Assembly (NCBI GenBank): GCA_002269645.1 | Contig: NIVC01001835.1 | Span: forward strand, 37,046-101,045 | Direction: 5' to 3' | Length of the DNA: 64,000 nucleotides | Origin: Macrostomum lignano | Taxonomy: Eukaryota | Shown: positions 38,101 to 57,011 of the stretch, one piece after another | How the letters are laid out: each line of letters starts with the position of its first letter | Numbering within the stretch: position 1 is the first letter of the stretch | The notes under the pieces: model-generated | Database searches by the model: none | Told to the model about the DNA's origin: nothing | What the model saw: the letters and a program-made list of their open reading frames with translations, nothing else | Program-made: the position numbers and the translations under genes

Positions 38101-41100
38101 TGAACCATTGACATTGCATTCTAAAAAAACTAAGCTTAGGCTTGTTGCTTATGTATAGATACTTTTATATTTATTAATCAAGTGGTCCAAAGGCCAAAAG
38201 ATTTCTAAATTAATTTAAATGTGTATCATAAATGAAAATTGAAAAGATATTCTAGTCCCTATAAATTAAGGTTTGAAATACTGTACTTAATAAGATGATA
38301 TAAATGTTGAATAATTCTAGCATATAGAGTGATCTGGCATTAACTGTTGGCATAATTGTTATATAGAGGGGCCTTGGATACCCCTTGGTATACAGCTTAA
38401 TACGAGTATACACAGATCATGAAGACAACAGGTGGGATTGAGTGTGTATATAGCTGTCTGTCTCTAATACAAAATACTTCATCTTTATGACTATGAATTA
38501 CATTTTGCTGCCAGGCGAGCTTACTATTTCTTACACTTCTTGTCCCTCCAACATATGCTCAACAGGTGGACTGCCAATACTGCCCCAACTGCCTAGACTA
38601 TATGTCATCTGGCGAGGCCAAGGTAAAAAAGAACCGCTGCAGTGCCTGCTATGACTGTCCCAGCTGCGGCCACACCCTGTCTACTAGGGCCACCTCTGCC
38701 ACTCTGCCAAGCCCCGACGATCCAACAAAACAGGTCGCTCAGAAAGTCTATTACCTGCTGTGCGCATTCTGTCGGTAAGTACGAGCGTACTTTATCAGAT
38801 TCTATATCAGTGCACCCAGAGTCTTGTGTTAATTCACTTCATTGGCCTTATTATGTGTCAACTAATTCCCAAATATCCTCTGAGAATTTGAGATTTATCA
38901 CAAATACTTTTAGGGACATGGTGGCTACACGTCACACTCTAATTAGGTGGGTACCCGTCACAAAGACTCGTATGAACTGGGTGGGTGCCCGTCACAAAGA
39001 CTCGTATGAACTGGGTAGGTACCCGTTAAAAAGACTTGTATGAACTGGGTGGGTACCCATCACAAAGGCACTAGAGCAAAGGTACTCTTCACAAAGACTC
39101 ATATCAACTAGGATTGGGTGGGTACCCGTCGCACAGAGTCAAAGACTCTACTATATAGAGTTGCTACTGGTAAGCAACAAAGAACTCAGACATGCCAGAC
39201 AGTTTCGATCCATCATCACAAAGTCTGAATCTGAATTTTAATAACGCCAATCAGTTGGACCACACGAGACGGCGGCATACCGGACCAGCGGGCGCCCTCT
39301 GTCCCGTGGCGCAACCTGGCCCAGGGCGCCGAGCTCAGGCAGGACAATTCCAAGCGATTAACCACCCTGACCGAGGCGTTTCGCCAGCTGGCTCTGAAAG
39401 AGAAGGCCGAGAAGGAGCGCAAGAAGATTGCAGTTAGAAAGAAATCGTTTTTCTCCCCGGGTCTGACCGATCGATACGGCCTGGCCTCTGTGGCTTTGCG
39501 AAAGAAGAGTCTGGCCAATCCCAGCCATTTCACGTGAGTTGCTGGCCTGCACCTGATGCCTAGCTAGTAGTTGCACTAGTAACCTGGTTATATGCTTTGG
39601 TACTAATCCCATTTTATTCCTTCGTGTATTCACCACTGCTGTCCCATTGTGTGTTGGGGGGGGTCACTGCTGTCCCATTGTGTGTTTGGGGGGGTCACTG
39701 CTGTCCCATTGTGTGTTGGGGGAGGTCACTGCTGCCCCATTGTGTGTTTGGGGGGGGTCACTGCTGCCCCATTGTGTGTGTTTGGGGGGGGGGGTCACTG
39801 CTGCCCCATTGTGTGTTTGGGGGGGGGTCACTGCTGCCCCATTGTGTGTGTTTGGGGGGAGGTCACTGCTGCCCCATTGTGTGTTTGGGGGGGGGTCACT
39901 GCTGCCCCATTGTGTGTTTGGAGGGGTCACTGCTGCCCCATTGTGTGTGTTTGGGGGGGGGTCACTGCTGCCCCATTGTGTGTTTGGGGGGGGTCACTGC
40001 TGCCCCATTGTGTGTTTGGGGGGGGGGGTCACTGCTGCCCCATTGTGTGTGTTTGGGGGAGGTCACTGCTGCCCCATTGTGTGTTTGGGGGGGTCACTGC
40101 TGCCCCATTGTGTGTTTGGGGGGGGTCACTGCTGCCCCATTGTGTGTGTTTGGGGGGAGGTCACTGCTGCCCCATTGTGTGTTTGGGGGGGGGGGGGGTC
40201 ACTGCTGCCCCATTGTGTGTTTGGAGGGGTCACTGCTGCCCCATTGTGTGTTTGGGGGGGGGGTCACTGCTGCCCCATTGTGTGTTGGGGGGGTCACTGC
40301 TGCCCCATTGTGTGTGTTTGGGGGGAGGTCACTGCTGCCCCATTGTGTGTTTGGGGGGGGGGGTCACTGCTGCCCCATTGTGTGTTTGGAGGGGTCACTG
40401 CTGCCCCATTGTGTGTGTTTGGGGGGTCACTGCTGCCCCATTGTGTGTGTTTGGGGGGAGGTCACTGCTGCCCCATTGTGTGTTTGGGGGGGGTCACTGC
40501 TGCCCCATTGTGTGTTTGGAGGGGTCACTGCTGCCCCATTGTGTGTGTTTGGGGGGGTCACTGCTGCCCCATTGTGTGTTTGGGGGGGGTCACTGCTGCC
40601 CCATTGTGTGTGTTGGGGGTGGGTCACTGCTGCCCCATTGTGTGTTGGGGGGGGGTCACTGCTGCCCCATTGTGTGTTGAGGGGGGTCACTGCTGCCCCA
40701 TTGTGTGTTGAGGGGGGTCACTGCTGCCCCATTGTGTATTTGGGGGGGGGTCACTGCTGCCCCATAGTGTGTTTGGGGGGGTCACTGCTGCCCCATTGTG
40801 TGTTTGGGGGGTCACTGCTGCCCCATTGTGTATTTGGGGGGGGGTCACTGCTGCCCCATAGTGTGTTTGGGGGGGGGGGTCACTGCTGCCCCATTGTGTG
40901 TCCGCAGAACTTGCATGGTGTCGTCTTGCTATTGTATAGTTTGGCCTGTTGAGTGTCCGGCTTTAAAAGCTAAATTAATCTGCAAACTATACACTGCTTT
41001 TTTGGCAGCTTTTGTTTGTCACGGCTCCGTACTAGACAAATATTTAAGCAAAATCAAACTTCAGATTCAAGCTTGTACCGCTATTCGATGACGAAGCTAA

Positions 41101-43793
41101 TGACAGGTTAAAACTGTTTATGATTGAATATAATTTATAGAAAACTATTTTTTACTATTTATGTGTCTTTTACTACTTTCAATTCAAGTAATAAGTAGTG
41201 CATGAGATAATTGAGGAAGTTTTTTATGCATGCTTGAATTTTATGTATTTAGTTTTTACTGAATTAGATTTTCATTACTCGTACTTTTCTCTTTAACAGT
41301 AGAAAAGGAGTTTTTTACTTTCAATCTAAGCAGCTGCAATCAGAGTTGATGTGCGAATTGCGATTGCAATCTTAAACGTGCTGCAGACAGTCAAATTCGA
41401 ACGCAAACATTCATTTCAGCGTATTGAGATTTCACATCGTCAAAAAACAGAATCTTTCACATTTTCACAAGCTCGATATTTTGTATACTCGAAACTTGAC
41501 AAACTCGGAATTTTGCATCGTTAAAAGTTTCGAGCTTGCAAAAAGTTCGAGCTTGTGAAGTTTCGAGCTTGTAAAATTTTGAGCTTGTGAAGCTTCGAGA
41601 TTGTGAAGCTTCGAGATTGTGAAGCTTCGAGCTTGTGAAGCTTCGAGATTGTGAAGCTTCGAGATTGTGAAACTTCGAGCTTGTGAAGTTTCGAGCTTGT
41701 GAAGCTTCGAGCTTGTGAAGCTTCGAGATTGTGAAACTTCGAGATTGTGAAGCTTCGAGCTTTGAAGCTTCGAGATTGTGAAGTTTCGAGCCTGTGAAGT
41801 TTCGAGCTCGTGAAGCTTCGAGCTTGTGAAGCTTCGAGATTGTGAAGTTTCGAGCTTGTGAATCTTCCAGATTGTGAAGCTTCGAGATTGTGAAACTTCG
41901 AGCTTGTGAAGTTTCGAGCTTGTGAAGCTTCGAGCTTGTGAAGCTTCGAGATTGTGAAACTTCGAGATTGTGAAGCTTCGAGCTTTGAAGCTTCGAGATT
42001 GTGAAGTTTCGAGCCTGTGAAGTTTTGAGCTCGTGAAGCTTCGAGCTTGTGAAGCTTCGAGATTGTGAAGTTTCGAGCTTGTGAATCTTCGAGATTGTGA
42101 AGCTTCGAGATTGTGAAGTTTCGAGCTTGTGAAGCTTCGAGATTGTGAAGTTTCGAGCTTGTGAAACTTCGAGCTTGTGAAGTTTCGAGCTTGTGAATCT
42201 TCGAGATTGTAGAAGTTTCGAGCTTGTGAAGCTTCGAGATTGTGAAGTTTCGAGATTGTAAAGTTTCGAGCTAGTGAAGTTTCGAGATTGTGAAGTTTCG
42301 AGATTGTAAAGTTTCGAGCTTGTGAAGCTTCGAGATTGTGAAGCTTCGAGATTGGGAAGGTTCGAGATTGTGAAGTTTCGAGCTTGTAAAAGTTTCGAGC
42401 TTGTAAAAAGCGAACCTAAAAGCCTAGCTGAACGAACAGCCACTTCATTAACCACTTAACCACAGGCCTCAAACTGTGGACATACCCGAAGCTCAAGCCA
42501 CCGAGGACCCCCCAGACGATCTGGACGAAGCCTACTGGCTGCCGCCGGTGCCCGAGCAGTCGCCGCTGGCGCCGGGGCTGCATACCCGCAGCAGCCTGCT
42601 GCAGCGCCTCGCCGACCCGGAGATCCAGCCGGAGCGCAGCAGCCAGCTCGCTCCCATCAGCAAGCCGGTGCTGTGCAAACGGTCGCTTCGCTGTCGCCAG
42701 TGCGATCACAATTTGAGCAAGCCAGAGCTGAATCCGGCCGCGCCTAAGTTTAAAATTAACCTGTGCGCCCTTTACAATGTGCCCGAGATGCGCCTGTACA
42801 GCGTGGGAGATGGAGAGGGCGGAGAGGGCGACGACTGGTGAGTGTGTTGCGCAGGTCATCGAAATTGGGGCCGGAGGAAATTTTTATTTGGGGATCAATA
42901 TGTGGGATGGGGATTTTTTGGGATAAGTATAGTGTGGAATGGGGATTTTTTGGGATATGTATAGTGTGGGATGGGGATTTTTTGGGATATGTATAGTGTG
43001 GGATGGGGATTTTTTGGGATATGTATTGTGTGAGTTTGGGATTTCAGTTTGTGGGATAAATATAATGTGGAATGGGGATTTCAGTTTGTGGGATAAATAT
43101 AGTGTAAAATGGAGATTTCAGTTTATGAGATAGTATAGTGTGGGTTAGGGATTTCAGTTTGAGGATCAATGCAGTGCTGGATGAGGATTTCATATTGGGT
43201 TTAATGTGTCAAATAGGAATTTCAGTTTGGGAAAAAATTAGACGAAGAAGTTAGTTTTGCTTGGGTTGATTCGGGCACTGGGATTTACGAGTAGATAAGC
43301 CTCTATGGGGATTTTACCGTGTGCAACTCTCCCTAACACTTGCTGATCCTCGGCCAACCCCCCCCCTCCGCTCAGCTGCCAGCTGACCCTGCTGCTCACC
43401 AACCCGGCCTCCAAGCCCACCGGAGTCCGTCTGCGCTGCCTGGACAGCCGGCTAGCCCTGCCAGACCGCGAGTTCAGCCTCGGACCCTGCGGCGACGCCG
43501 CCTTAGACCTCGACGATCCCCTAGCCGCTGCCGGCGCCCAGTCGCCGAGCTCGGAGCCGGACAGGCCCGATGAGGTGGCCTTCCGCGGCCCCGGCAGGCT
43601 GGGCCTTCTCGCTCGACTGCGCTGCGCCAGACAGCTGGCCGCTAGGGAAGGCGTCCGTCTAGAATTGAGCTACGAATTTCGCAATATTGTGCTGCCGTCT
43701 GCCGCGGCTGGCGAATCTGTTGAAGTTCGTCGGCTGACCGCCGAGCTGCTGCTGAGGCCGCCAGCGTCGTCTGGCGCTGCTGCTAAGGCTTGA
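35124..43793 (+). CDS. DCTN4: Dynactin subunit 4 (p62), 5 exons, 468 aa
   Basis: Exons 35124-35252, 38566-38774, 39255-39533, 42466-42837, 43376-43793 (1407 nt, phases consistent). Motifs [18 protein letters not shown]...[63 protein letters not shown]. Confidence 0.95.
37440..38050 (+). pseudogene. Heavily decayed non-LTR (RTE-like) reverse transcriptase fragment in DCTN4 intron 1
   Basis: Discontinuous motifs in RT order: [49 protein letters not shown]; many stops. Confidence 0.65.
38945..39135. repeat. Short 34-bp tandem repeat (GGGTACCCGTCACAAAGACTCGTATGAACTGGGT)
   Basis: About 4-5 degenerate copies in DCTN4 intron 2. Confidence 0.75.
39630..40900. repeat. ~30-35-bp minisatellite (GTCACTGCTGCCCCATTGTGTGTTTGGGGGGG)n with variable G-run
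   Basis: Directly visible in DCTN4 intron 3. Confidence 0.95.
41530..42410. repeat. 16-bp minisatellite (GAAGCTTCGAGCTTGT / GAAGCTTCGAGATTGT)n
   Basis: Directly visible in DCTN4 intron 3. Confidence 0.94.
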
Positions 43794-44807: not shown

Positions 44808-45125
44808 TTAGACAACGCCGCACACCATCGTGTTGTCTCCGGTTGAGAAGGCGTCACTCTTAGTCACGCTGCCGAACTTCATCCAGCAGGTGCCGCCGTT
44901 GTAGCGGGTCCAGGCGAAGTGGGTGCAGCGGTGGGTTCGGGCGCAGGCGCCACCGCACTGCTCGCCGGGCATCCGCTCATTCTTCAGATCGCGGTTGTAG
45001 AAGTCGCAACCGAACGCCCAGTTGCCGTTCCAGCGGATGCGTCGAGCCTCTACTTGAGTTGACACGGCGCAAAGGAGACCCGCGAACACCAGTAGAACCT
45101 TCAACGAGCTGATACGGCCGGCCAT
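44808..45125 (-). CDS. Secreted single PAN/apple-domain protein (105 aa)
   Basis: ATG at 45125 starts a signal peptide (MAGRISSLKVLLVFAGLLCAVSTQVEA), then WNGNWAFGCDF...CGGAC...CTHFAW...GGTCWMK...CGVV, clearly paralogous to the N-terminal module of 47782-48750. Confidence 0.85.
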   Translation of the reverse strand: MAGRISSLKVLLVFAGLLCAVSTQVEARRIRWNGNWAFGCDFYNRDLKNERMPGEQCGGACARTHRCTHFAWTRYNGGTCWMKFGSVTKSDAFSTGDNTMVCGVV

Positions 45126-46179
45126 CACTGCGCTCTGCTTTGCTAATAGATCGTAGGTAGGTATAGTACAGCTTCCGATTACTGATATACAGCTACAGCT
45201 GTGTCCGGTCTCCCAGCTCGTAAAATGGCGTTTTTGTGCGACAGAACCGAGTAAATTAAGAGCCAAGAGGCTCCTTAAGGAGTGTGAGAGACTTGGTGAC
45301 CTTAGGAGAGCTCATAAATGTTTGTACTCGTAGCGTACTGTGCAGGTAGAATTAGAAAATAAAGAGTTAGAATGGTAGATAGATATACCTACCCCTCGTA
45401 CCTAGAAACCATTTTTAGTTTAGCGGATTTTTACGAGCGCATGTTCTACTGAAGGAGCACACTTCACTCCAGACTCTCTAGCCCAAGGATGCAAGGGACG
45501 AATTTGGCACTCACAAATTTGACACTCACTAAAGGGATTTTAGATTTTTAGAAGCTTGATGAAATAGGAGCCAGTCGGGTGTAGCCTTTAATGGCCGCAG
45601 TTCAGATTCTCGTAGGCCCTACCTAAACGAAACCAGAGCAAAGATCTTGACAGCAACTTACCAAGTTTTGTGGTTGACTCTCGGTAAGGATAAACTAGAA
45701 TTAGTAGTATTTCGCAACCGATCCTGGGTTGGTTGTGTTTTTCTGAGTCAATTTTTACCTGCTTTTAAAGACTGGACAGTCTTTCAGTCGCTGCATTAGT
45801 TTGGGGTGGCAACGTGGCACAGCTCTGACGCTATTGGCTGTCGCGCTAAAGTAGCTCGTGCAAGTTAATCACCTACTGAGAGATGCACTCGTGAGGGCCA
45901 GATATAATTATCCCCAAGGCTCAGAGAGTACATGCCTGCAAGTGAGTCACTGCCCTCGTGCTGAGCATCTGCGTCAAGGTGCGCGCAGGGTGCAGGGGGT
46001 TTGCAATTTCGAAAGTAATCTTCCAATTAAAACTGCAACTTACGCATTGAAACTGAAACGTCTAAAAACTTATTCTGTGCGATAATTATCTAATGGTTAA
46101 TAGTTCAATTTTAATATTGCGCAATCACTCGACTTGTACTTTGCCACTGTGATGCATATCGCTTAAAAAGTTTGAACCC

Positions 46180-46640
46180 GATAGCCTATCGGTAATTAAA
46201 ACCATGTACAACTAAAATATAGGGACTTGAACTGGATAGCCTATCGGTAATTAAAACCATGGACACCTAAAGTAGAGGGACATGAACTGGATAGCCTATC
46301 GGTAATTAAAACCATGGACACCTAAAGTAGAGGGACATGAACTGGATAGCCTATCGGTAATTAAAACCATGGACACCTAAAGTAGAGGGACATGAACTGG
46401 ATAGCCTATCGGTAATTAAAACCATGGACACCTAAAGTAGAGGGACATGAACTGGATAGCCTATCGGTAATTAAAACCATGGACACCTAAAGTAGAGGGA
46501 CATGAACTGGATAGCCTATCGGTAATTAAAACCATGGACACCTAAAGTAGACATGAACTGGATAGCCTATCGGTAATTAAAACCATGGACAACTAAAGTA
46601 GAGGGACAGAACTGGATAGCCTATCGGTAATTAAAACCAT
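46180..46640. repeat. 55-bp minisatellite (GATAGCCTATCGGTAATTAAAACCATGGACACCTAAAGTAGAGGGACATGAACTG)n
   Basis: About 8 copies, directly visible. Confidence 0.92.
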
Positions 46641-47184
46641 GAAAATGCTGCTAATGTAAACAGAAATAGCGCACCTGGTGTTTGGTTTCACGTGCGCCAA
46701 TATGCTTGAATGTTTTAGGTGCCTAATGACTGACGAGAGAAACTAATGGGACCAATTAAAGTATCGAATTGATTTGAAATTGATCGCTATCAAGCTGTTA
46801 TGTAGCTTCGAATCACCTGATAAAAGAAATTATATCTAGTACACATAGTTGCACCAATAATCCCTTGATGCGTGCTTTTCAATTTGTATTTGGTTTCTGA
46901 TCAAAACAGCTCCATGATGATGAACAGCTAAAACAGAAGGACACTAAAGTCGCGAATCGTGCAAATCTTACTGGAGGCCAGTCATTGCTGCAAATTTTTT
47001 TTGCTTTTAAAGGTCAAAAAGCACATACTTGACTAGTTTTGCATTCTGAAGGTTGATAAAGCTGTTAATTTAGTGCACAAACACTGAAAACTTCAGATCT
47101 TTCTACGCTCCTATATCACTCTATCCGGACCTCGAGTCCTTTGAAACTTCACGATAGCAATACGGCTAGCTTAGGGTTTGTGTC

Positions 47185-47697
47185 TCTTCTCAGCTCTCCT
47201 CTCTCATCTCCCCTCTCTACCCTGCTCTCCACCCTCCTCTATCATCTCCCCTCTCTCCCCTGCTCTCCACCCTCCTCTCTCATCTCCCCTCTCTACCCTG
47301 CTCTCCACCCTCCTCTCTCATCTCCCCTCTCTCCCCTCTCTCCCCTGCTCTCCACCCTCCTCTCTCATCTCCGCTCTCTCCCCTGCTCTCCACCCTCCTC
47401 TCTCATCTCCCCTGTCTCCCCTCTCTCCCCTGCTCTCCACCCTCCTCTCTCATCTCCCCTGTCTCCCCTCTCTCCCTGCTCTCCACCCTCCTCTCTCATC
47501 TCCCCTCTCTCCCCTGCTCTCCACCCTCCTCTCTCATCTCCCCTGTCTCCCCTCTCTCCCCTGCTCTCCACCCTCCTCTCTCATCTCCCCTGTCTCCCCT
47601 CTCTCCCCTGCTCTCCACCCTCCTCTCTCATCTCCCCTCTCTCCCCTGCTCTCCACCCTCCTCTCTCATCTCCCCTCTCTCTACCCTCTCTACCTGG
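47185..47697. repeat. CT-rich ~38-48-bp minisatellite
   Basis: Directly visible. Confidence 0.92.
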
Positions 47698-47781
47698 CTT
47701 AGTTAAGACTCGCGAGTTTAACGTTCTTGATCTTTTTCAGTTGCCCATGGCTTAATGCCGTTCCAGTAAACTGAGTTCTAA

Positions 47782-48750
47782 TCAGTCGTCATCTCGCCTG
47801 CAGCCGCTGATAGCGACGAGAGCGTCCGGGCAGCGGACCCTCGAGTACACCATGGCGGGGTTGTCGGCCCCCCTGAACCAGTCGAATCGCCAGTAGCAGC
47901 CGTCGCGAATTTGCGCCGGCAGAGAGCCGCACTCGCTCCGTCTCGACACTCCGCCGTAGCGCTGGCCCCAGCCGTCTGGCCCCGCGTTCCACTGCGCGCT
48001 GCAGCCGTTGAAAATGCCGACACCGCCGCCTGGGATTTGCAAGTCGAACTGGTTCGGGTGCACGTCGCCTCCGCTGTTGGTGACCTGCACCACCATGGAT
48101 TTTCCCTGCACAGGGCCGTTGGTGAAGTCCAGCTTGTAGCAGGCGCAGCAGCGACCGCTCTCGTCCAGACCGGGGATGGTGGCGGCGGCGAAGCCGTAGG
48201 CCAGCTGGTCGCTCACCGCCCACGGCTTGTTGTTGTTGCAGGCGAACACGGGTCCGCCGTTGCAGCCGCTGGCACCGTTGGGATCGCTGGTCACTCCGTA
48301 GCCGTCGCGATAGCAGGCGCGCACGTATTTGTTATGGCCGGGCACTTTGCCTGGCCAGGAACAGCTGGGCTTGCAGCAGTCCCAGTAGCGGGTGGTGAAT
48401 CCTGGCACCTTGTTGCCTCCGCCGCCACCGCCGCCCCCGTTGTCTTCAATAACTCCGCACACCATGGTCATGTCACCAGTTGGGAAGGCATCGCTCTTTG
48501 ACACGCTACCTCGCTTCATCCAGCAGGTGCCACCATTGTGTTGAGTCCAGGTGAAATGGGTGCAGCCCTGAGTGTTGGCGCACCTTCCGCCGCACTGCTC
48601 TGAAGGGATTCGCACGTTCGACAAGTCGTTGTTACGAAAGTCGCAGCCATGCGCCCAGTTGTTGCCATTCCAGTTGATGTTGGCCAAGACGGAGCTTGAG
48701 CACAGGACCAGTACTGCAGCCACTAGTAGGCAGCTGTGTCTTAGCGCCAT
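47782..48750 (-). CDS. Secreted PAN/apple + GH45 (subfamily A-type) endo-beta-1,4-glucanase, intronless, 322 aa
   Basis: Signal peptide, PAN module, poly-Gly linker, GH45 signature TTRYWDCCKPSC, YGFAAA, CCACYKLDF, MVVQVTNSG, QFDLQIPGGGVGIFNGC, WGQRYGG, GCYWRFDWF; both catalytic Asp present. Confidence 0.95.
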   Translation of the reverse strand: MALRHSCLLVAAVLVLCSSSVLANINWNGNNWAHGCDFRNNDLSNVRIPSEQCGGRCANTQGCTHFTWTQHNGGTCWMKRGSVSKSDAFPTGDMTMVCGVIEDNGGGGGGGGNKVPGFTTRYWDCCKPSCSWPGKVPGHNKYVRACYRDGYGVTSDPNGASGCNGGPVFACNNNKPWAVSDQLAYGFAAATIPGLDESGRCCACYKLDFTNGPVQGKSMVVQVTNSGGDVHPNQFDLQIPGGGVGIFNGCSAQWNAGPDGWGQRYGGVSRRSECGSLPAQIRDGCYWRFDWFRGADNPAMVYSRVRCPDALVAISGCRRDDD

Positions 48751-48864
48751 ATCTGATTTCCTCTTGGACGGTTACGTAGTTTTGCGCTCTGGAAAAAATA
48801 GTTTGACGGTTCCGATGCTTTATAGCTACGTTGACAGGCCAAAAACCTGCTTGATGAATCAGTG

Positions 48865-49029
48865 GATTGATTGGACTAAAGCTATGCCTGCTGGATCGGT
48901 AGAGTGATTGGACTAAAGCTATGCCTGCTGGATCGGTAGAGTGATTGGACTAAAGCTATGCCTGCTGGATCGGTAGAGTGATTAGACTAAAGCTATGCCT
49001 GCTGGATCGGTAGAGTGATTGGACTAAAG
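48865..49029. repeat. 37-bp tandem repeat (TTGGACTAAAGCTATGCCTGCTGGATCGGTAGAGTGA)
   Basis: Period 48871 to 48908; about 4 copies. Confidence 0.9.
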
Positions 49030-49074
49030 TAGAAGGCATGAGGGGGCTTCTGGGACAAAATTTTTCACCTCCTC

Positions 49075-49282
49075 CATAATCCCATTAAATCCATCCATAT
49101 TATCCCTGACAGAATCAGAAAAAAAGGGGGGTCGCACTCGCTCCGAAAACGTCCTCCATAATCCACCTAAATCCATCCATATTATCCCCGACAGAATCAG
49201 AAAAAAAGGGGGGTCGCACTCGCTCACAAAACGTCCTCCATAATCCCATTAAATCCATCCATATTATCCCTGACAGAATCAG
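49075..49282. repeat. 82-bp subterminal tandem repeat (2.5 copies), possibly part of the viral TIR
   Basis: CATAATCC...ATATTATCCC...AGAATCAG at 49075, 49157 and 49239. Confidence 0.8.
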
Positions 49283-49482
49283 AGCAGGTGTCCACTGATA
49301 CCTGTTATGTTCACTGACACTGACATCCACCCATAACATTTCTAAAACAATCAGAAAATAATCTGCATTCTTCTCCCCATGGGGCCCACATTCAATCCGC
49401 AACGTGCTACCACATCCCAAAGACTTTAAATCATCAGCGCAGGGTCCTTACCCTTTGAAAAAAAATTAAATTCTCAATAAAA

Positions 49483-50725: not shown

Positions 50726-53700
50726 CACAGTGTATTTCTATGGTAAGATTTTTTGAAAAAATGGCCAATCAAGATTTTTACTATCATTAATAGATCACAT
50801 TTTTCTAGAGAGGAAGCCACAATATTAAAAAAATCTGTCGAGCGGTTGCTGAGTAACTACTGTTTTTCTGTTTTTCATGCTGTTTCATGCTGTTTTCATT
50901 TTTTTGCTTTGATACAGGCTATAATAGGCAAATTGGTATCAAAAACGTTATTCAATGTTTTTCTTTCAACATTAATAAATTATATTATTAGTATAAATTT
51001 AAAGAATGCTTGTACAATATAAAAACTTTCAGCTTGAAACGTAGTTGTACAATGTCAATATAAATTACACATTAGGAGTGAAAACAATGTCAAAGTCCAC
51101 ACTGACTACATGTCCTACACATGTCGGCTATTATAATGATGCACAGCCTGAAGCAAACGACTTCCAAAGCTGGGATTTTCTACATCCTTGACCTTGAAGT
51201 TCGCCCATAGCTGCTGAAAGTCGTGGTGCACTGCTTCAGATGCCTGTTCACTCCAGGGACCAAGTCCTCGCTGTTGCATCAAACAGAACTGTGGCACATG
51301 ATGCAGCACTGTGTGAACTTTCGGTGTCACTGAGATCCCGAGGTCCATGAACGCCACTTGAAAATCAGTGATCGTCTGCTGGAAATTGGAGGCCAGTTCA
51401 TTGCCAAAGCAGCTGGACACAACAAGCCTGAAGCAGCGCAGTGCAGCAACGTACGGCAAGCACTGTAGCGGGCACATCGATGCCAGAGCATCAACATTCT
51501 GCAGGAGCACTTTGCAGCTGTTGCCGGTAAAACTGCCTCCGTGAATTGCCTCCCTGGCGACGTGGCAGTGATGCAGCCATCTGTCACACTCTGGCCACAC
51601 TGACTGCATACTACAGTAAATGGTATTTACTACTCCAGTTAGCAGGTGCAGTTCAGGCGGTGGTACAATTTCTAGGACCATTGTTGAGGCTGGGAAATTT
51701 TCTAGAAGACAGGGACGTACCACATTTCCAAAATTCTTGGCAGCTGCAAGCTTAGAGCCAGAAGCCTGGAAGTTTGCATGGCTGTCTTCGAGAAGCTTCA
51801 GTGTGCGATCTGTGCCCTTCTGCAATAGCTTATTCTTGTGGGCATCGCACCAGCAGCAGGGATGAGCAGCACTGTGAGCCATAAGCCCAAGCAGCATGTT
51901 GCACAGCTTCAAGTCGCTAGCGATGGTAAATTTGCCTTGAAGACTGCTCAGTCCAGCTGCCCTCCACAGCAACTCCAGGTTCTGGTAATTTTCTTGAATA
52001 GCTGGTGCGATGGCTACAATAAGAATTCGTTTAACACCGGAGTGCTTTAGCCGACTGCTGCGAGAGTTGCTGCTACAGGCTGCCTGCGAAGGCTCAGTGG
52101 AGTCAACACACCAACTGGAATCAAACACAGACAGGCAGATCTTGAAGAACCCACCACCTCCATCAATGCCAACCTTAATCATACAGGTCGATGGGTTCAG
52201 TTGTCTTTCTTGAATAATTCGCTCGAGAAGCTGCTGAATGCGCACACAAATAACAGCTGGACGTGATGTTACTTCTGTCACAACTCCTCGCTCCATGTTG
52301 ACGAAGTCCAACTGTTGTAGTTCAAAAAAGCTGTCGAGCTGGTGGTGAATGTCAGACAGCTTTTGTTGGAGGTACGACTCTACAGCTGTTTTTGAACCCG
52401 ACGCTGCTCTAATATGGTGAGCCAGCTTCAGCATAGAGCGCGTGCTGAGGCCCATATCCTGCTGAATGCTCACCATGCTGCTGACGCTCAGCTGCTGTGG
52501 TTGCTTCGGCGTACTCTGAGATGGTGGCTCCACTTCCATGTAAAAGCTTTCTGCATTATGTGCCCTTGTAGCAGGAGTACAGACATGTGACTTGCCTCGA
52601 TTTAGCTGCGAGAGGCACTTCACACAGAGCTTCATGCTGACTGGGCGTCGAGTTTTTGACACAGTGCTGGCAGTGGGCTTGCAACCAATCCTACTTTGAC
52701 TGTCAGCGCTTGGCCTTCCTTGTGGTCGCCGATTAACTGCTGCTGGATGTCCAAAGTTTGCGGAGCTTTCTCTGGCAGCCTGACACACAATACAGTTGCA
52801 TCGAGTAGCTGCTCGGCTTCGTGTTTGAGGAGGCTGGGCTCCAATCTTAGAGTGGTCGAAGTTGGGCAGCGAGGACGAAAAGTTTCCTTTCTCGTACTCT
52901 AGCAGCGTTATCCTGCATTTTGTGCACAGAGCACTTGGTAGCCGATTGTCCTGCGTATCGTAGCCATGCATCTTGAACTCTGAGATGAGTGACTGCATGT
53001 GCTCATTTATCCGGCGTATTTCCTTGCCCTTATGCATGCAGATGAGGCAGACGATGAGACGAGCATCTTCGTGCGTTCTGGCACTGCTGCTTTTACTCAT
53101 AATGCCTGACACTGAGCGTGCTTGGTGTCGATTAAGAAAGGTGCTACACAACAAATCTGATATGTAATGAGACGCAGAGATTGTGCAATGAATATAAAAA
53201 CTTCTCTGGTTAGATTAAAGTGAAATCAATCGATAAGAGCGACTTATATATATTCATTGATTGCTGAGCAGACGAGTTTTTAGCTCAGCAAACTTGTGTG
53301 CATTGCGCACTGTATAGCACACTATTTGATTGAGTAATAGATGAGTGACTGCGTTCTTCAACTCCAAATCATGCACACGCAGTCTCCCCTCAATAGAGAA
53401 GTAGTACAGTTAGTACAAAACCCATTTGTTACATTCAATCACAATTGTACCCTGTATTTTTGGAACATTCATTTTGATTAGCATATGAAATGTGTGTAAA
53501 AAACAGCCTATTTGTTGGCTAAACAAATGGACCTTAAGCTTATAAGTGATTTTCTGTTTGAACTAGAAAAACAAAAACAAATAACACGAAACAGCATAAA
53601 ACAGCATTAAAAACAGAAAAACAGTAGTTTCTTAGCAACTGCTTGATGGATTTTTTAAAGTCTTGTAGCATTCTCTCTGGACATACATGATCTATTGATG

Positions 53701-53760
53701 ATAGTAAAAATCTGGGGTGGCCATTTTTTTCAAAAAATGTCACCATAGAAATACACTGTG
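50726..53760 (-). mobile_element. 3035-bp RAG1/Transib-like DNA transposon with CACAGTG termini and 5-bp TSD GGAAT
   Basis: GGAAT at 50721-50725 and 53761-53765; both ends start CACAGTGTATTTCTATGGT (19 nt identical); imperfect TIR similarity extends to ~50900 and ~53585. Confidence 0.95.
51115..53100 (-). CDS. DDE transposase with RAG1/Transib-like core and N-terminal Chapa/RAG1-like zinc module (661 aa from ATG 53100)
   Basis: GIDGGG (D, cf. RAG1 D600), ASDLK...GL...CCWC (D, cf. GYDEK...GL...CTLC), ELHLLTG, FTGNSC, KVHTVLHHV (HxxxxH), GPWSEQASEAVH (E, cf. E962). N-terminus H-x7-C-x2-C...LP-x3-C-x2-C...CxC-x2-C. No stops or frameshifts. Confidence 0.88.
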   Translation of the reverse strand: MSKSSSARTHEDARLIVCLICMHKGKEIRRINEHMQSLISEFKMHGYDTQDNRLPSALCTKCRITLLEYEKGNFSSSLPNFDHSKIGAQPPQTRSRAATRCNCIVCQAARESSANFGHPAAVNRRPQGRPSADSQSRIGCKPTASTVSKTRRPVSMKLCVKCLSQLNRGKSHVCTPATRAHNAESFYMEVEPPSQSTPKQPQQLSVSSMVSIQQDMGLSTRSMLKLAHHIRAASGSKTAVESYLQQKLSDIHHQLDSFFELQQLDFVNMERGVVTEVTSRPAVICVRIQQLLERIIQERQLNPSTCMIKVGIDGGGGFFKICLSVFDSSWCVDSTEPSQAACSSNSRSSRLKHSGVKRILIVAIAPAIQENYQNLELLWRAAGLSSLQGKFTIASDLKLCNMLLGLMAHSAAHPCCWCDAHKNKLLQKGTDRTLKLLEDSHANFQASGSKLAAAKNFGNVVRPCLLENFPASTMVLEIVPPPELHLLTGVVNTIYCSMQSVWPECDRWLHHCHVAREAIHGGSFTGNSCKVLLQNVDALASMCPLQCLPYVAALRCFRLVVSSCFGNELASNFQQTITDFQVAFMDLGISVTPKVHTVLHHVPQFCLMQQRGLGPWSEQASEAVHHDFQQLWANFKVKDVENPSFGSRLLQAVHHYNSRHV

Positions 53761-54022
53761 GGAATACCACAGGTTCTGCTGCTGCACCTTTCCATTTGTA
53801 ATAAAACTTATTATTTGCTGCCGACACATTGGGAACGTTTGACCAACCAGTGAAGTCGTTAAGATAGACATGATAATTAGCACCTGGATCCAGGCTAATC
53901 GCCTGCTCTAATTTTTGAATAAATATCCCGTTTGAGTCATTAATTCGCCCAGTTATTGTAATAGGAATGCTCTCCTTGGAGTGCGAAATAATATTATTTA
54001 GTCTTTCAGCAATCGCTTCCAT
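53761..54022 (-). pseudogene. Minor capsid protein (penton), N-terminal part
   Basis: MEAIAERL...LEQAISLDPG..YHVYLNDFTGWSNVPNVSAANNKFYY, a penton-type N-terminal pattern; reconstructed length 287 aa; directly downstream of MCP. Confidence 0.8.
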
Positions 54023-54044
54023 TTTTCCACCCACAAAAAAATAT

Positions 54045-55331
54045 TTAAACTTTACTGGATGAATTGTTGATCATGTTAAGCTTCACCTTCCTCTCAAATG
54101 CATAGATAATGTACAAGTCCACGGGTGTTGCGTCAGTCCTCTCAATGTTAGTCACGATATTCACAGGGCTGTTATCAGTAGGCATTTGTCTGGCAGACAC
54201 ATCAGCGCCAAACATTGGATATAGAGTTCCATATTGAAGAGCTGTGATAGCAATTCCGTTGTTCTCTTTCACAGCCAAGTCGACCAACTCGCTGTAAAAT
54301 TTGCTAATCTTGTTCTGACTGAAATTTCCATTTTGTGGCAGTGCAGGGTAAAGATTATCACTGATTTCATGCTGAATGGACCGCACGTCTCCATGCATGT
54401 AGCGTATAATGCTATTTGGGTTTCTCATGCTAATAATAATATACCTTGGATTGCTGCATGATCCCTCTTTGATGCAGATGTTTGTTCTAGTTTCGTTTCG
54501 CTCATCTCGACACATGTAGGCTGTGTATGCAACATCAATGTCCTTCTCTATTGCCTTAAGATAATCTGCTTTTAGTGCAGTCTTTGGCTCAATGACTTCC
54601 AAATACAGCTCGATTCCGGTTAGCTTCACCTCCATCCTAGTGTGGTCCGCCCCAGTCCACAACACTCTACTGCGATCATCTCTAGTCATCTTAAAGGTGT
54701 AGCTAAAGTTACTAGTCAGTCGATTAAATGTATTACAGAATCCACTCATAAATCTCAGTGGTACAAATACATCAACAGACCGATACAGCGGGTTTTTAGC
54801 AGCATCATCAGCACCTTGCAATGCATAGTTGTATCTCTTCTTCCTCTTTTTATAGCCACTGTCATTGATGTCTCCTTCTTTTTCATCTGCAATAAAACCC
54901 GCACCGCTTCCCAACTGAATAAAATCAGGATTCTCGATCAAACAATGAGCGTCATAGACAATTCCAAAGTTGGCGATTCGCTCCAACTCAGTGCTCCCAT
55001 TCGATACACTAAACTCCTTGAACATGTACGCCCAAAAGTTACTGATCAGAGCCACATCCGCATCATGCTTGTCAACGTTAGCACGAGCCGCATCCGCACC
55101 ACCTTTTGTCTTGAATTGAAATGTCATATGGAAGCCGCTCTTAAAACTGTGCACACTAACCAAAGACGAACATCCATTGTATGTGAATGTCAGTGTTTGG
55201 CCAGGACCAAGATTAGTTTCATTCTGATTTTCCTGACTGGGAACTCTTACCTGAGTCGCTTTGATTGTGCTATCATCACTCAAAATAGGCTTGTTAATTT
55301 TGTAGAAAACTGGTGTCAGTGGGTCGTTCAT
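54045..55331 (-). CDS. Double-jelly-roll major capsid protein (428 aa), intact
   Basis: Size, position between penton and ATPase cluster, and pattern SDDSTIK...LISNFWAYMFKE...LERIANFG...VFVPLRFMSGFC...PRYIIISM...FGADVS fit Polinton/adintovirus MCPs. Confidence 0.8.
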   Translation of the reverse strand: MNDPLTPVFYKINKPILSDDSTIKATQVRVPSQENQNETNLGPGQTLTFTYNGCSSLVSVHSFKSGFHMTFQFKTKGGADAARANVDKHDADVALISNFWAYMFKEFSVSNGSTELERIANFGIVYDAHCLIENPDFIQLGSGAGFIADEKEGDINDSGYKKRKKRYNYALQGADDAAKNPLYRSVDVFVPLRFMSGFCNTFNRLTSNFSYTFKMTRDDRSRVLWTGADHTRMEVKLTGIELYLEVIEPKTALKADYLKAIEKDIDVAYTAYMCRDERNETRTNICIKEGSCSNPRYIIISMRNPNSIIRYMHGDVRSIQHEISDNLYPALPQNGNFSQNKISKFYSELVDLAVKENNGIAITALQYGTLYPMFGADVSARQMPTDNSPVNIVTNIERTDATPVDLYIIYAFERKVKLNMINNSSSKV

Positions 55332-55362
55332 TTTTTTAACTAAAAATAAAATAAAATAAGAA

Positions 55363-56574: not shown

Positions 56575-56590
56575 TTTATTTCAAGTAAAA

Positions 56591-56968
56591 ATGCCACTTA
56601 TTTTCGAAAAAGACATTGACAAATACTATGACAAAGAGGAACTTAATCTCATTAAACGCGGATCTGGACTTTTCCCTGCAGGCCACTATCCAAGAAAAGA
56701 ACGCTCAGGGAACGGTCTTGCCGATTTGATCGCTCAGGGGGCCAAGATTTTTAAGGTCATTGGAGAGAACAAAGAGAACATCAAGAACGTTGCCGAAGCG
56801 GCTGGCAGTGTAGCCACAGCAGCCAAAAAGATAAAGGATACTGTAACACCTAAACAAGAGATTCAACCGCTGGCTCCGCTGGCCCCAAATCCAGACAATG
56901 TGGACCCTGCAGTCTATGAGAAGATGAGAGCTAGCATTAAAAAGGGAAGCGGTTTCAAATTTGACTAA
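56591..56968 (+). CDS. 125-aa basic protein with repeated GxG motifs; candidate protease-processed core protein
   Basis: ATG 56591 in AAAAATG context; RGSGLF, SGNGLA, KGSGFK motifs. Confidence 0.65.
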   Translation: MPLIFEKDIDKYYDKEELNLIKRGSGLFPAGHYPRKERSGNGLADLIAQGAKIFKVIGENKENIKNVAEAAGSVATAAKKIKDTVTPKQEIQPLAPLAPNPDNVDPAVYEKMRASIKKGSGFKFD

Positions 56969-57011
56969 AGGGTACTTTTCAAGGGTACAAGACATGTAAG
57001 AGTATAAGACT

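What the first reader, a model, noticed from the sequence alone, without database searches (positions are those of the whole stretch)
47782..48750. Intronless secreted PAN+GH45 cellulase in an intron-rich animal genome
Seen: signal peptide + PAN module + Gly linker + complete GH45 domain, GC-rich and intronless, while neighbouring host genes have 5-10 exons. A strong acceptor (ttttttccag, AG at 48790-48789) lies ~40 nt upstream of the ATG. Established: TTRYWD-type GH45 enzymes in animals (beetles, nematodes, rotifers, springtails) are usually horizontally acquired from fungi or other microbes. Inference: a domesticated HGT cellulase with a PAN module where a CBM normally sits, perhaps for digesting algal or plant-type glucans.
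Basis: partly seen in the sequence, partly recalled or inferred. Interest (0 to 1): 0.7.

Follow-up and report, generated by a model that had tools for sequence, protein, structure and literature searches.

The report
Flatworm secreted PAN-GH45 cellulase gene
This is an intact, intronless gene of the flatworm Macrostomum lignano for a secreted cellulase with a PAN/apple module at its front; its closest relatives are the same two-part gene in bdelloid rotifers, not fungal genes, so it probably reached the flatworm ready-made by gene transfer among tiny animals.

Summary
Window 47782-48750 (-) is a 322-aa intronless ORF: signal peptide, one PAN/apple module, poly-Gly linker and a complete GH45 subfamily-A domain with both catalytic Asp. 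The host is Macrostomum lignano: a GenBank contig has the same gene next to DCTN4 at about 96% DNA identity, so it is not a contaminant.

- The PAN module was not added in the flatworm. The same PAN+GH45 architecture, with PAN 65-78% identical, occurs in bdelloid rotifers, tardigrades, a springtail and an ostracod assembly.
- The nearest relatives are rotifer genes, not fungal ones. The flatworm gene nests among bdelloid sequences in 76-97% of NJ bootstraps.
- GC-richness is not a foreign signature. GC3 is 0.78, against 0.57-0.76 in DCTN4 exons, and each homologue matches its own host.
- The upstream acceptor fits the published SL motif, but that motif is no more frequent than chance, and the RNA-derived GenBank model starts downstream of it.

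A stand-alone PAN gene lies at 44811-45125. [quoted passage not shown] It is the first flatworm case I could find, and the PAN link is undescribed in the searched literature.

The parts
47782..48750 (-). Complete intronless CDS (322 aa plus TGA stop) of the secreted PAN-GH45 endoglucanase
   Evidence: ORF list and sequence. Pfam GH45 E 2e-73 plus PAN_4 and PAN_1. 98% identical to M. lignano PAA89100.1, Mlig002476.g1.
48682..48750 (-). Signal peptide, residues 1-23 (MALRHSCLLVAAVLVLCSSSVLA)
   Evidence: Read from the sequence: basic n-region, hydrophobic core, V-L-A before the mature NINW. Modelled as a helix at residues 2-18. Three of the five non-synonymous differences between the two M. lignano copies fall here. 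No dedicated predictor was run.
48448..48681 (-). PAN/apple module, residues 24-101, with six invariant Cys (C36, C53, C57, C63, C76, C98) and conserved Trp (W27 and W32 invariant, W68 nearly so)
   Evidence: Pfam PAN_4 and PAN_1 just above cutoff. Invariant columns in a 37-sequence alignment. Modelled at pLDDT about 86-93. Foldseek hits to the SML-2 lectin, HGF N domain, FXI apple domains and Colletotrichum oxidase PAN.
48403..48447 (-). Poly-Gly linker, residues 102-116 (DNGGGGGGGGNKVPG)
   Evidence: Sequence. pLDDT below 50 at residues 104-111. Folsomia has a similar Gly run.
47785..48402 (-). GH45 subfamily-A catalytic domain, residues 117-322. The catalytic base D124 (TTRYWD) is at 48379-48381, the catalytic acid D236 (NQFDL) at 48043-48045, and D229 (GGD) is also conserved.
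   Evidence: Pfam. PDB sequence hits 5h4u, 5glx, 1l8f and 2eng at E 1e-70 to 4e-76. Predicted fold superposes on 4eng and 5h4u at TM 0.94-0.96, rmsd 1.2-1.3 A. D124 is invariant and D229 and D236 are at least 90% conserved.
48789..48794 (-). Acceptor-like TTCCAG (AG at 48790-48789), 39 nt upstream of the ATG; a possible SL trans-splice site, unproven
   Evidence: Sequence. Fits [T/C]TNCAG (PMC8629364). Kept as CTCCAG in the second copy despite a 7-nt indel in the pyrimidine tract. The motif is not enriched over chance. The GenBank RNA-derived CDS starts at 48768.
48819..48824 (-). TATAAA box-like motif, with its first T 75 nt upstream of the ATG and about 30 nt upstream of the acceptor-like site
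   Evidence: Sequence. Identical in the second M. lignano copy. Function is inferred only.
48868..49029 (.). 37-bp tandem repeat (4.4 copies) directly upstream of the promoter region; expanded to about 900 bp in the GenBank copy
   Evidence: TRF; blastn against L001.
47196..47691 (.). CT-rich 38/47/85-bp tandem repeat array downstream of the gene, between it and the PAN-only gene
   Evidence: TRF. The ORF-like readings at 47141-47755 are repeat artefacts.
44811..45125 (-). Stand-alone paralogue: signal peptide plus one PAN module (104 aa plus stop), same strand, 2.66 kb downstream. It stops exactly where the Gly linker starts in the cellulase.
   Evidence: tblastn shows 65% identity to the cellulase N-terminus including PAN. 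Pfam PAN_4 27.1 bits. Annotated in GenBank as Mlig017410/029562/021770 apple-domain proteins, five copies. The model is PAN-like. It shares the 5' string cagAGCGCA with the cellulase gene.
38497..42838 (+). Host context: two confirmed exons of dynactin p62 (DCTN4), at 38497-38775 and 42452-42838, convergent with the cellulase gene
   Evidence: Pfam Dynactin_p62 E 3e-8 and 1e-11. Same neighbour in GenBank contig NIVC01000164.1.

Best explanation
The ORF encodes a working secreted two-module enzyme of the flatworm Macrostomum lignano. A signal peptide sends it out of the cell, most plausibly into the gut lumen. An N-terminal PAN/apple module on a flexible Gly linker holds it on a polysaccharide or glycan surface. 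The GH45 subfamily-A domain cuts beta-1,4-glucan chains by the inverting mechanism, using D124 as base and D236 as acid.

The gene is not a private flatworm invention. It belongs to a PAN-GH45 family shared with bdelloid rotifers, tardigrades, springtails and an ostracod assembly, in which PAN and GH45 were already fused.

It entered the Macrostomum lineage horizontally as the finished fusion, from a bdelloid-like rotifer lineage or from a donor shared with bdelloids. That happened long enough ago for it to adopt host codon usage, to gain a stand-alone PAN paralogue as neighbour, and to be copied along with the genome duplication.

Shown here: architecture, fold, catalytic residues, integration in the host genome, family distribution, tree position and composition. 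Inferred: secretion into the gut, the substrate, the binding role of PAN, and the direction of transfer.
For: Identity and integrity.
- Pfam GH45 E 2e-73 plus PAN.
- PDB hits 5h4u and Humicola EGV at E about 1e-70 to 1e-76.
- AlphaFold pLDDT 88; the GH45 part superposes on 4eng and 5h4u at TM 0.94-0.96.
- Catalytic D124, D229 and D236 are conserved.

Host integration.
- GenBank M. lignano contig NIVC01000164.1 has HDAC, PAN-GH45, PAN-only and DCTN4 in that order.
- The window matches it at about 96% over the shared ~11 kb from the upstream repeat through the cellulase and PAN-only genes into DCTN4.
- The assembly holds at least three copies, each with a PAN-only neighbour.

Expression and selection.
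- The GenBank models derive from RNA-seq (PMC5730564).
- The CDS is 98.9% identical between copies, against about 96% for flanks. There are 6 synonymous and 5 non-synonymous codon differences, three of the latter in the signal peptide.

The family is shared.
- PAN+GH45 occurs in Rotaria, Adineta, Didymodactylos, Hypsibius, Paramacrobiotus, Folsomia and Darwinula.
- PAN is 65-78% identical across phyla.

Source.
- The flatworm gene pairs with P0004-7 at 82-87% bootstrap.
- The contig carrying P0005 is bdelloid-like by its MFS neighbour gene.
- The flatworm is nested among named bdelloids in 76-97% of bootstraps, and rotifer monophyly without it appears in 2-23%.
- It is 69-73% identical to Rotaria, while Rotaria and Adineta are 64-70% identical to each other.

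Against vertical descent.
- No other flatworm, monogonont rotifer, mollusc or annelid is among the best 120 hits.
- No intron position is shared between Folsomia (5 introns) and Hypsibius (2 introns); the gene is intronless in the flatworm and in rotifers.

Age.
- GC3 is 0.78 in M. lignano, 0.11 in A. vaga and 0.31 in L005; each fits its host.

PAN as a binding module.
- Foldseek hits include the galactose lectin SML-2, MIC4 apple and the heparin-binding HGF N domain.
- The same PAN is fused to a second, unrelated wall-type domain in rotifer and springtail.
- In oomycete CBEL proteins PAN is paired with CBM1 (PMC3532174).
Against: - Only neighbour-joining trees could be built. Nodes inside the rotifer clade are weak (28-45%), and with named taxa only the nesting drops to 76%.
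- Flatworm plus rotifers forming one group is also what vertical descent within Spiralia predicts.
- Many relatives are unnamed environmental sequences, so a non-animal donor carrying PAN-GH45 cannot be excluded.
- Absence from other flatworms rests on what the protein database holds, not on a genome-by-genome search.
- There is no direct evidence for secretion, tissue of expression, enzyme activity, substrate or PAN binding.
- PAN Pfam scores are barely above cutoff.
- M. lignano is fed diatoms in culture (PMC12732829), and diatom walls are not classically cellulosic, so the natural substrate is unclear.
Confidence: 0.68

Rival explanations
1. Ancient vertical inheritance. A PAN-GH45 gene existed in an early protostome or bilaterian ancestor and survives only in a few meiofaunal lineages (Macrostomum, bdelloids, tardigrades, springtails, ostracods) after massive loss elsewhere. 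The apparent nesting in bdelloids reflects old paralogy.
For: - Every named organism with PAN+GH45 is an animal.
- In the NJ trees, flatworm and rotifers (both Spiralia) group together, with tardigrades and Folsomia outside.
- Full amelioration to each host's composition shows long residence.
- Introns are present in the ecdysozoan members.
Against: - It requires losses in nearly all animal lineages. No other flatworm, monogonont rotifer, mollusc, annelid or non-sciarid insect is among the best hits.
- The flatworm falls inside bdelloid diversity rather than sister to it in 76-97% of bootstraps.
- The flatworm-Rotaria distance is no larger than the Rotaria-Adineta distance.
- No intron position is shared between springtail and tardigrade.
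- Published analyses found metazoan GH45s polyphyletic (PMC6509783).
Confidence: 0.17
2. A bare fungal or microbial GH45 was transferred directly into the flatworm lineage, then fused there to a host PAN exon that took the place of a CBM.
For: - Fungal GH45 domains (Mucoromycota, Ascomycota) are about 55-62% identical over the catalytic domain.
- A stand-alone PAN gene lies 2.66 kb away and could look like a donor of the module.
Against: - The cellulase's PAN is 65-78% identical to the PANs of rotifer, tardigrade, springtail and Darwinula PAN-GH45 genes, but only 65% identical to the neighbouring PAN-only gene.
- The whole fusion, including the position of the linker, is shared across phyla.
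- The GH45 domain alone also nests in the rotifer-dominated clade (bootstrap 0.80) and not with fungi.
Confidence: 0.04
3. Same enzyme, different job. It does not digest dietary cellulose. Instead the PAN-GH45 protein and the stand-alone PAN proteins act on microbial or self-made glycans: biofilm or diatom exopolymers, oomycete or fungal walls (defence), or the worm's own secreted matrices. PAN would act as a lectin for galactose-type glycans rather than for cellulose.
For: - The closest structural analogues of the PAN module include galactose-binding lectins (SML-2, MIC4) and protein- or heparin-binding apple domains.
- The CBEL PAN was suggested to bind another glucan, and CBEL binds glycoproteins through galactose (PMC3532174).
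- Hundreds of small secreted PAN-only proteins exist in the same animals.
- The laboratory diet is diatoms.
- Some beetle GH45s act on glucomannan or xyloglucan (PMC6509783).
Against: - The catalytic machinery and substrate-cleft motifs are those of classical endo-beta-1,4-glucanases.
- GH45s from rotifers, beetles, nematodes and molluscs are cited as cellulolytic (PMC6509783).
- The closest solved structure, 5h4u, was deposited as an endo-beta-1,4-glucanase/cellulase from a springtail.
Confidence: 0.1
4. Artefact: a contaminant (rotifer or fungus) or a chimeric assembly join.
For: The nearest relatives are rotifer genes. Upstream of the 37-bp repeat the window and the GenBank copy share nothing.
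Against: - Two independent sequences carry the gene between the same host-specific repeats and DCTN4 at about 96% identity.
- There are at least three annotated copies in Mlig_3_7.
- GC3 of 0.78 matches M. lignano exons and is far from rotifer values of 0.11-0.37.
- The upstream difference is explained by a copy-specific block of mobile-element ORFs.
Confidence: 0.01

Closest known systems
Bdelloid rotifer GH45 genes (Rotaria, Adineta, Didymodactylos; the family studied in Adineta ricciae by Szydlowski et al. 2015, as cited in PMC6509783)
   Same: The architecture is identical: signal peptide, PAN, linker, GH45. Identity is 61-73% full-length with named bdelloids and 78% with an unnamed bdelloid-like sequence over the mature protein. 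The genes are intronless and are regarded as horizontally acquired.
   Different: The host phylum is Platyhelminthes. Codon usage is at the opposite extreme (GC3 0.78 against 0.11-0.37). Some rotifer copies have 2-3 tandem PANs. The A. vaga copy has a head-to-head PAN-X partner gene that the flatworm locus lacks.
Cryptopygus antarcticus (springtail) GH45 endo-beta-1,4-glucanase, PDB 5h4u
   Same: It is the best PDB sequence hit (E 4e-76) and matches the catalytic domain at TM 0.96 and 55% identity. It is an animal GH45 of subfamily-A type.
   Different: The crystallised chain covers only the catalytic domain. The related Folsomia gene has five introns, while the flatworm gene has none.
Humicola insolens endoglucanase V (Cel45A; 2eng, 3eng, 4eng) and other fungal GH45-CBM1 enzymes
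   Same: Same fold (TM 0.93-0.94, rmsd 1.2-1.5 A), the same TTRYWD and HFDL-type catalytic motifs, and 52-56% identity.
   Different: The fungal enzymes carry a C-terminal CBM1 after a Ser/Thr-rich linker. Here the accessory module is an N-terminal PAN/apple domain on a poly-Gly linker.
Horizontally acquired GH45s of Phytophaga beetles and Bursaphelenchus/Aphelenchoides nematodes
   Same: They are animal-encoded GH45 cellulases with a patchy distribution, attributed to HGT from fungi (PMC6509783).
   Different: They form separate clades, have no PAN module, and are only 35-59% identical.
Oomycete CBEL-type proteins (CBM1 + PAN/apple)
   Same: A PAN/apple module is built into a secreted cellulose-interacting protein (PMC3532174).
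   Different: CBEL is non-catalytic, and its cellulose binding is assigned to CBM1 rather than to PAN. No sequence relationship to it was tested here.
Colletotrichum graminicola copper radical oxidase with an N-terminal PAN domain (6ryv, 6ryw, 6ryx, 6stx)
   Same: A PAN module is appended to a secreted fungal copper oxidase; it is structurally similar to this PAN (Foldseek probability 0.92-0.99).
   Different: The catalytic domain is unrelated, identity is about 12-14%, and the function of that PAN is not established here.

Membership tests
Glycoside hydrolase family 45, subfamily A | Sequence match to the GH45 profile above the curated threshold | tested here: met
   PF02015 scores 247 bits against a cutoff of 27 and covers profile positions 2-214 of 214.
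Glycoside hydrolase family 45, subfamily A | Double-psi beta-barrel GH45 fold | tested here: met
   The AlphaFold model (domain pLDDT about 90-97) superposes on 4eng, 5h4u and 1l8f at TM 0.94-0.96, rmsd 1.2-1.3 A. This is a predicted structure, not a solved one.
Glycoside hydrolase family 45, subfamily A | Catalytic base Asp in TTRYWD (EGV Asp10) and catalytic acid Asp in HFDL (EGV Asp121); residue roles are taken from established knowledge of Humicola EGV | tested here: met
   D124 in TTRYWDCCKPSC and D236 in NQFDLQIPGGGVG. D124 is invariant, and D229 and D236 are at least 90% conserved in the family alignments.
Glycoside hydrolase family 45, subfamily A | Inverting endo-beta-1,4-glucanase activity | not testable with these tools
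   This needs recombinant enzyme assays.
PAN/apple domain superfamily | Profile match | tested here: met
   PAN_4 scores 27.2 against a cutoff of 27, and PAN_1 scores 22.4 against 21.4. Both pass, but only just. The PAN-only paralogue scores 27.1 on PAN_4.
PAN/apple domain superfamily | Fold: an alpha-helix packed on a curved antiparallel sheet, stabilised by conserved disulfides | tested here: met
   The model has helix 50-58 plus five strands. Six Cys are invariant. The top 48 Foldseek hits of the PAN-only model are all PAN/apple or the PAN-related MANEC fold, at probability 0.54-1.0 (0.8 or higher for most) but with weak E-values of 0.025-0.3.
PAN/apple domain superfamily | Ligand (carbohydrate or protein) binding | not testable with these tools
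   There are only analogies: SML-2 and MIC4 bind galactose, and the HGF N domain binds heparin.
Horizontally acquired animal gene | Physically integrated in the host genome next to bona fide host genes | tested here: met
   DCTN4 and HDAC are neighbours, seen in two independent sequences.
Horizontally acquired animal gene | Patchy taxonomic distribution, absent from close relatives of the host | tested here: met
   Among named hits, only M. lignano among flatworms and only bdelloids among rotifers are in the best 120. This is limited by database content.
Horizontally acquired animal gene | Gene tree conflicts with the species tree, nesting inside a donor group | tested here: inconclusive
   The gene nests among bdelloid sequences in 76-97% of NJ bootstraps, but no ML or AU test was possible, internal nodes are weak, and the deeper link to fungi is unresolved.
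Horizontally acquired animal gene | Compositional or structural foreignness (atypical GC, no introns) | tested here: inconclusive
   The gene is intronless in a genome with about 5 introns per gene, but its GC3 equals that of host exons.
SL trans-spliced M. lignano gene | [T/C]TNCAG acceptor at the 5' end of exon 1 with no upstream cis donor | tested here: inconclusive
   The motif is present and kept in both copies, but it is no more frequent than chance. The RNA-derived GenBank CDS starts 21 nt downstream, after CG rather than AG.
SL trans-spliced M. lignano gene | RNA-seq reads carrying the 35-nt SL joined at that site | not testable with these tools
   No read data are available here.

The most novel reading that the evidence does not exclude
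A PAN-tagged plant-wall toolkit has moved between animals. On this reading the PAN-GH45 gene passed from a bdelloid-like rotifer lineage into Macrostomum. A head-to-head PAN-GH45 / PAN-X gene pair, which is shared by Adineta vaga and Folsomia candida with X 49.5% identical and matching no Pfam family or solved structure, spread among meiofaunal phyla as a cassette. The strongly conserved, Trp-rich PAN module would then be a previously unrecognised carbohydrate-binding module family serving several catalytic partners.
Probability: 0.3. Interest if true: 0.8.

Novelty: new variant of a known kind. Interest (0 to 1): 0.55.

Why it matters
Animal-encoded GH45 cellulases are a textbook case of horizontal gene transfer into animals, but the accepted picture is several independent fungus-to-animal events.

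This locus adds a new phylum, Platyhelminthes, in a genetically tractable model with transgenesis and RNAi.

It also shows that the flatworm, rotifer, tardigrade, springtail and ostracod genes share a derived PAN-GH45 fusion that the searched literature does not mention. That points to one origin of the fusion followed by spread among microscopic animals. Animal-to-animal transfer of this kind is rarely documented, and here it can be tested.

The finding further nominates a small PAN module as a candidate new carbohydrate-binding module. That module also occurs alone, and fused to a second unknown wall-type domain.

If the simple reading holds, this is an ordinary domesticated digestive cellulase.

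Tried and rejected
- **Contaminant or chimera:** rejected on synteny in two sequences, at least three annotated copies, and host-like GC3.
- **GC-richness as a foreign signature:** rejected. Confirmed DCTN4 exons have GC3 of 0.57 and 0.76, and the PAN-only gene 0.67.
- **Acceptor as evidence of SL trans-splicing:** the motif is not enriched (302 hits against 341 expected), and the RNA-derived model starts downstream. Left undecided.
- **Operon with the PAN-only gene:** the 2.66-kb spacing, even after removing about 0.5 kb of repeats, exceeds the published 1-kb operon threshold. Not pursued.
- **Link between the gene's arrival and the Maverick/Polinton-like block upstream:** rejected, because that block is absent from the other M. 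lignano copy.
- **A remnant of domain X next to the flatworm PAN-only gene:** none found by tblastn.
- **X as a diverged GH45:** hhalign probability 0.3%. PDB sequence search found nothing. There is only a faint EXLX1 expansin hit at E 0.004, far below cutoff.
- **Exact-sequence look-up of the window protein:** not on record.
- **Literature searches that returned nothing:** GH45+Macrostomum, 'PAN domain'+cellulase+GH45, GH45+'apple domain', and Mlig002476. Macrostomum+cellulase gave one irrelevant paper.
- **ML phylogeny:** no ML software was available, so only NJ with bootstraps and Dayhoff-6 recoding was done.
Full report
**1. What is in the sequence**

The minus strand of window 47782-48750 holds one uninterrupted 322-aa ORF. 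It starts at ATG, and an in-frame TAA lies nine codons upstream.
- Pfam finds a full-length GH45 domain at residues 117-318 (E 2.2e-73).
- Pfam also finds a PAN module, with PAN_4 at 27.2 bits against a cutoff of 27 and PAN_1 at 22.4 against 21.4.
- The first 23 residues read as a classical signal peptide.
- Residues 102-116 are a Gly-rich linker.

An AlphaFold model built on 37 homologues has mean pLDDT 88.4, and only the linker is disordered.
- The GH45 part superposes on Humicola endoglucanase V, Thielavia, Neurospora and Melanocarpus Cel45 and on the springtail enzyme 5h4u, at TM 0.90-0.96 and rmsd 1.2-1.5 A.
- The N-terminal part matches PAN/apple proteins.
- The catalytic Asp pair (D124 in TTRYWD, D236 in NQFDL) and the auxiliary D229 are conserved.

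**2. Whose genome, and is the gene really in it**

The best database hit is Macrostomum lignano PAA89100.1 (Mlig002476.g1), at 98% identity. Its 252-kb GenBank contig carries, in order, histone deacetylase, the intronless PAN-GH45 gene, a 105-aa PAN-only gene and dynactin p62. The window aligns to that contig at about 96% identity over the shared ~11 kb from the upstream repeat through the cellulase and PAN-only genes into DCTN4.

Two DCTN4 exons are confirmed in the window by Pfam. The Mlig_3_7 assembly holds at least three copies of the cellulase gene, each with a PAN-only neighbour. That fits the known redundancy of this assembly (PMC5730564). A contaminant or a chimeric join is excluded for practical purposes.

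Upstream of the 37-bp repeat the two copies share nothing. The window instead carries a block of mobile-element ORFs there (see section 7).

**3. Signs of use**

The GenBank gene models come from an RNA-seq-based transcriptome (PMC5730564), so the gene is transcribed.

Between the window copy and the GenBank copy the CDS is 98.9% identical, while the flanks are about 96% identical. There are 6 synonymous and 5 non-synonymous codon changes. Three of the non-synonymous changes are in the signal peptide, and only two are in the mature protein. The sample is small, but it fits purifying selection.

**4. The 'foreign' signatures**

The gene is intronless in a genome that averages about five introns per gene.

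Its GC-richness, however, is not foreign. GC3 is 0.78, against 0.57 and 0.76 in the DCTN4 exons and 0.67 in the PAN-only gene.

The homologues each match their own host: GC3 is 0.11 in Adineta vaga (locus GC 0.30), and 0.31 and 0.37 in two rotifer-like metagenome contigs. Whatever its origin, the gene has been resident long enough to be fully ameliorated.

**5. The upstream acceptor**

TTCCAG at 48794-48789 fits the published SL-acceptor motif [T/C]TNCAG (PMC8629364). It survives as CTCCAG in the other copy, despite a 7-nt indel in the pyrimidine tract.

Three points weaken it as evidence.
- The motif occurs 302 times in the window against 341 expected from shuffles.
- The RNA-derived 5'-partial CDS in GenBank begins at the position equal to window 48768. 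That is 21 nt downstream of the acceptor and follows CG, not AG.
- A TATAAA lies about 30 nt upstream of the site, so a conventional transcription start is equally possible.

This point remains undecided.

**6.

The PAN+GH45 architecture is not a flatworm peculiarity. It is found in:
- bdelloid rotifers (Rotaria, Adineta, Didymodactylos; 61-73% identity);
- tardigrades (Hypsibius, Paramacrobiotus; 53-58%);
- the springtail Folsomia (59%);
- many unnamed environmental sequences;
- the ostracod Darwinula, whose annotated model is truncated. Two intact PAN modules lie directly upstream of it, so that gene is PAN-PAN-GH45.

The PAN module itself is 65-78% identical across these phyla, with six invariant Cys and conserved Trp. 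Fungal GH45s match only the catalytic domain, at about 55-62% identity, and carry CBM1 instead. The fusion therefore predates the gene's presence in Macrostomum.

Busch et al. 2019 treat GH45s of Collembola, oribatid mites, tardigrades and rotifers as products of several HGT events. They mention neither a PAN module nor flatworms (PMC6509783). Full-text searches combining GH45 with Macrostomum, 'PAN domain' or 'apple domain' found nothing.

**7. Where the flatworm gene sits in the tree**

No ML software was available. I used neighbour-joining on Kimura-corrected distances, with 200-1000 bootstraps.

- On the GH45 domain alone (117 sequences), the flatworm pair falls in a 38-sequence clade of bdelloid, environmental and Darwinula sequences, at bootstrap 0.80. 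Deeper nodes are unresolved.
- On PAN+GH45 (46 sequences, 288 columns), the flatworm pairs with environmental sequences P0004-P0007 at 82-87%.
- The 310-kb contig that carries P0005 is bdelloid-like. Its neighbouring MFS gene has named hits only in Rotaria, Adineta and Didymodactylos at 55-65%, and the next best hit is at 38%.
- The flatworm gene is nested among named bdelloid sequences in 97% of bootstraps. This is 95% after Dayhoff-6 recoding and 76% with named taxa only.
- Rotifers are monophyletic without the flatworm in only 2-23% of bootstraps.
- Distances agree. The flatworm is 69-73% identical to Rotaria, and Rotaria and Adineta are 64-70% identical to each other.

Intron positions add to this.
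- Folsomia has five introns.
- Hypsibius has two, both shared by its two paralogues.
- None coincides between the two phyla.
- The flatworm, A. vaga and the rotifer-like contigs have none.

No other flatworm, monogonont rotifer, mollusc or annelid appears among the 120 best hits.

Taken together, horizontal spread of a ready-made PAN-GH45 gene is more likely than vertical descent with massive loss. The flatworm copy would come from a bdelloid-like source or from a donor shared with bdelloids. The support is moderate because it rests on NJ trees only, and the vertical rival is kept at about 0.17.

**8. The PAN module and how the enzyme probably works**

The module occurs in three contexts.
- It is fused to GH45.
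- It stands alone behind a signal peptide. This includes window 44811-45125, 65% identical to the cellulase's N-terminus including PAN, with five annotated copies in M. lignano. A PAN profile finds 583 proteins; the 120 listed are 83-147 aa, and those that carry a name are from bdelloids and M. lignano.
- In A. vaga and F. candida it is fused to a different domain of about 205 aa, 'X', in a gene lying head-to-head with the PAN-GH45 gene.

X is 49.5% identical between rotifer and springtail. It has no Pfam family, no PDB relative and no relation to GH45 by hhalign. Its only lead is a faint hit to bacterial expansin EXLX1, at E 0.004 and far below cutoff.

Within each of those two species the two neighbouring PAN modules are almost identical, which suggests gene conversion.

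Structural analogues of the PAN module include the following:
- the galactose lectins SML-2 and MIC4;
- the heparin-binding HGF N domain;
- the PAN of a secreted Colletotrichum copper oxidase.

Oomycete CBEL proteins couple PAN with CBM1 (PMC3532174).

The most likely mechanism is that PAN tethers or targets the catalytic domain to a polysaccharide or glycan surface through the flexible Gly linker, much as CBM1 does in fungal Cel45A. Binding specificity and the natural substrate are inferred, not shown. The laboratory diet is the diatom Nitzschia (PMC12732829), so substrates other than crystalline cellulose are possible.

**9. Verdict**

The gene is a domesticated, horizontally acquired GH45 cellulase in an animal, which is a known kind. 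Three things are new.
- This is the first flatworm instance I could find.
- The PAN-GH45 fusion is undescribed in the searched literature and is shared by at least five animal phyla.
- The tree position points to spread among meiofaunal animals rather than direct uptake from a fungus.

Interest is moderate at 0.55. It would be higher if animal-to-animal transfer and a carbohydrate-binding role for this PAN family were proven.

Noticed in passing
window ~53500-64000 (ORFs 54048-55457 -, 57155-57957 +, 59626-59946 -, 60144-62392 -): This is a block of large intronless ORFs. It includes a double-jelly-roll capsid-like domain (Pfam DJR-like, E 3e-5) and a type-B DNA polymerase with Endonuclease_7. 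From the sequence alone there also appear to be a P-loop ATPase and an adenain-like protease. Together they look like a Maverick/Polinton-type virus-like transposon. The block is absent from the other M. lignano copy of the locus, so it is a copy-specific insertion unrelated to the cellulase's origin. It was deliberately not assembled or printed.
   Followed up: partly
L002 1438-2367 (-) (Adineta vaga) and L003 3307-4355 (-) (Folsomia candida): In both a rotifer and a springtail, the PAN-GH45 gene lies head-to-head with a gene that encodes the same PAN module fused to an unknown ~205-aa domain, X. X is 49.5% identical between the two phyla (E about 1e-73). It has no Pfam or PDB match, only a faint EXLX1 expansin hit at E 0.004. 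Within each species the two PAN modules are nearly identical, which suggests gene conversion. A gene pair conserved across phyla points to a shared cassette.
   Followed up: partly
window 44811-45125 (-): This is a stand-alone secreted PAN gene (104 aa) that ends exactly where the cellulase's Gly linker begins. It shares the 5' string cagAGCGCA with the cellulase gene. It belongs to a large family of small secreted PAN proteins: a PAN profile finds 583 hits, of which the 120 listed are 83-147 aa, with named ones only in bdelloids and M. lignano. Its function is unknown.
   Followed up: partly
L008 5536-6660 (Darwinula stevensoni assembly, CAJPEV010003843.1): The annotated 219-aa GH45 protein is a truncated model. 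Two intact PAN modules lie directly upstream with no intron evident between them, so the gene is PAN-PAN-GH45. It was not checked whether this 27-kb contig belongs to the ostracod or to a co-sequenced rotifer.
   Followed up: partly
window 39557-40949, 41460-42455, 46173-46641, 47196-47691, 48868-49029, 49070-49283: There are long tandem-repeat arrays, some of which read as long spurious ORFs (for example GGHCCPIVC-type repeats at 39557-40949, inside a DCTN4 intron). They surround the locus. The 37-bp array upstream of the cellulase has 4.4 copies here and about 25 in the GenBank copy.
   Followed up: no
window 51118-53214 (-): A 699-aa ORF with no significant Pfam match lies between the cellulase locus and the Maverick-like block. 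It is absent from the other M. lignano copy within the region available.
   Followed up: no
L005 11846-15248 (bdelloid-like metagenome contig, ENA ERZ26165376): Next to the rotifer PAN-GH45 gene lie an intronless condensation-domain-like gene (487 aa; the Pfam hits are flagged as faint) and an MFS transporter gene. This may be a cluster of foreign-looking genes of the kind reported in bdelloids.
   Followed up: no
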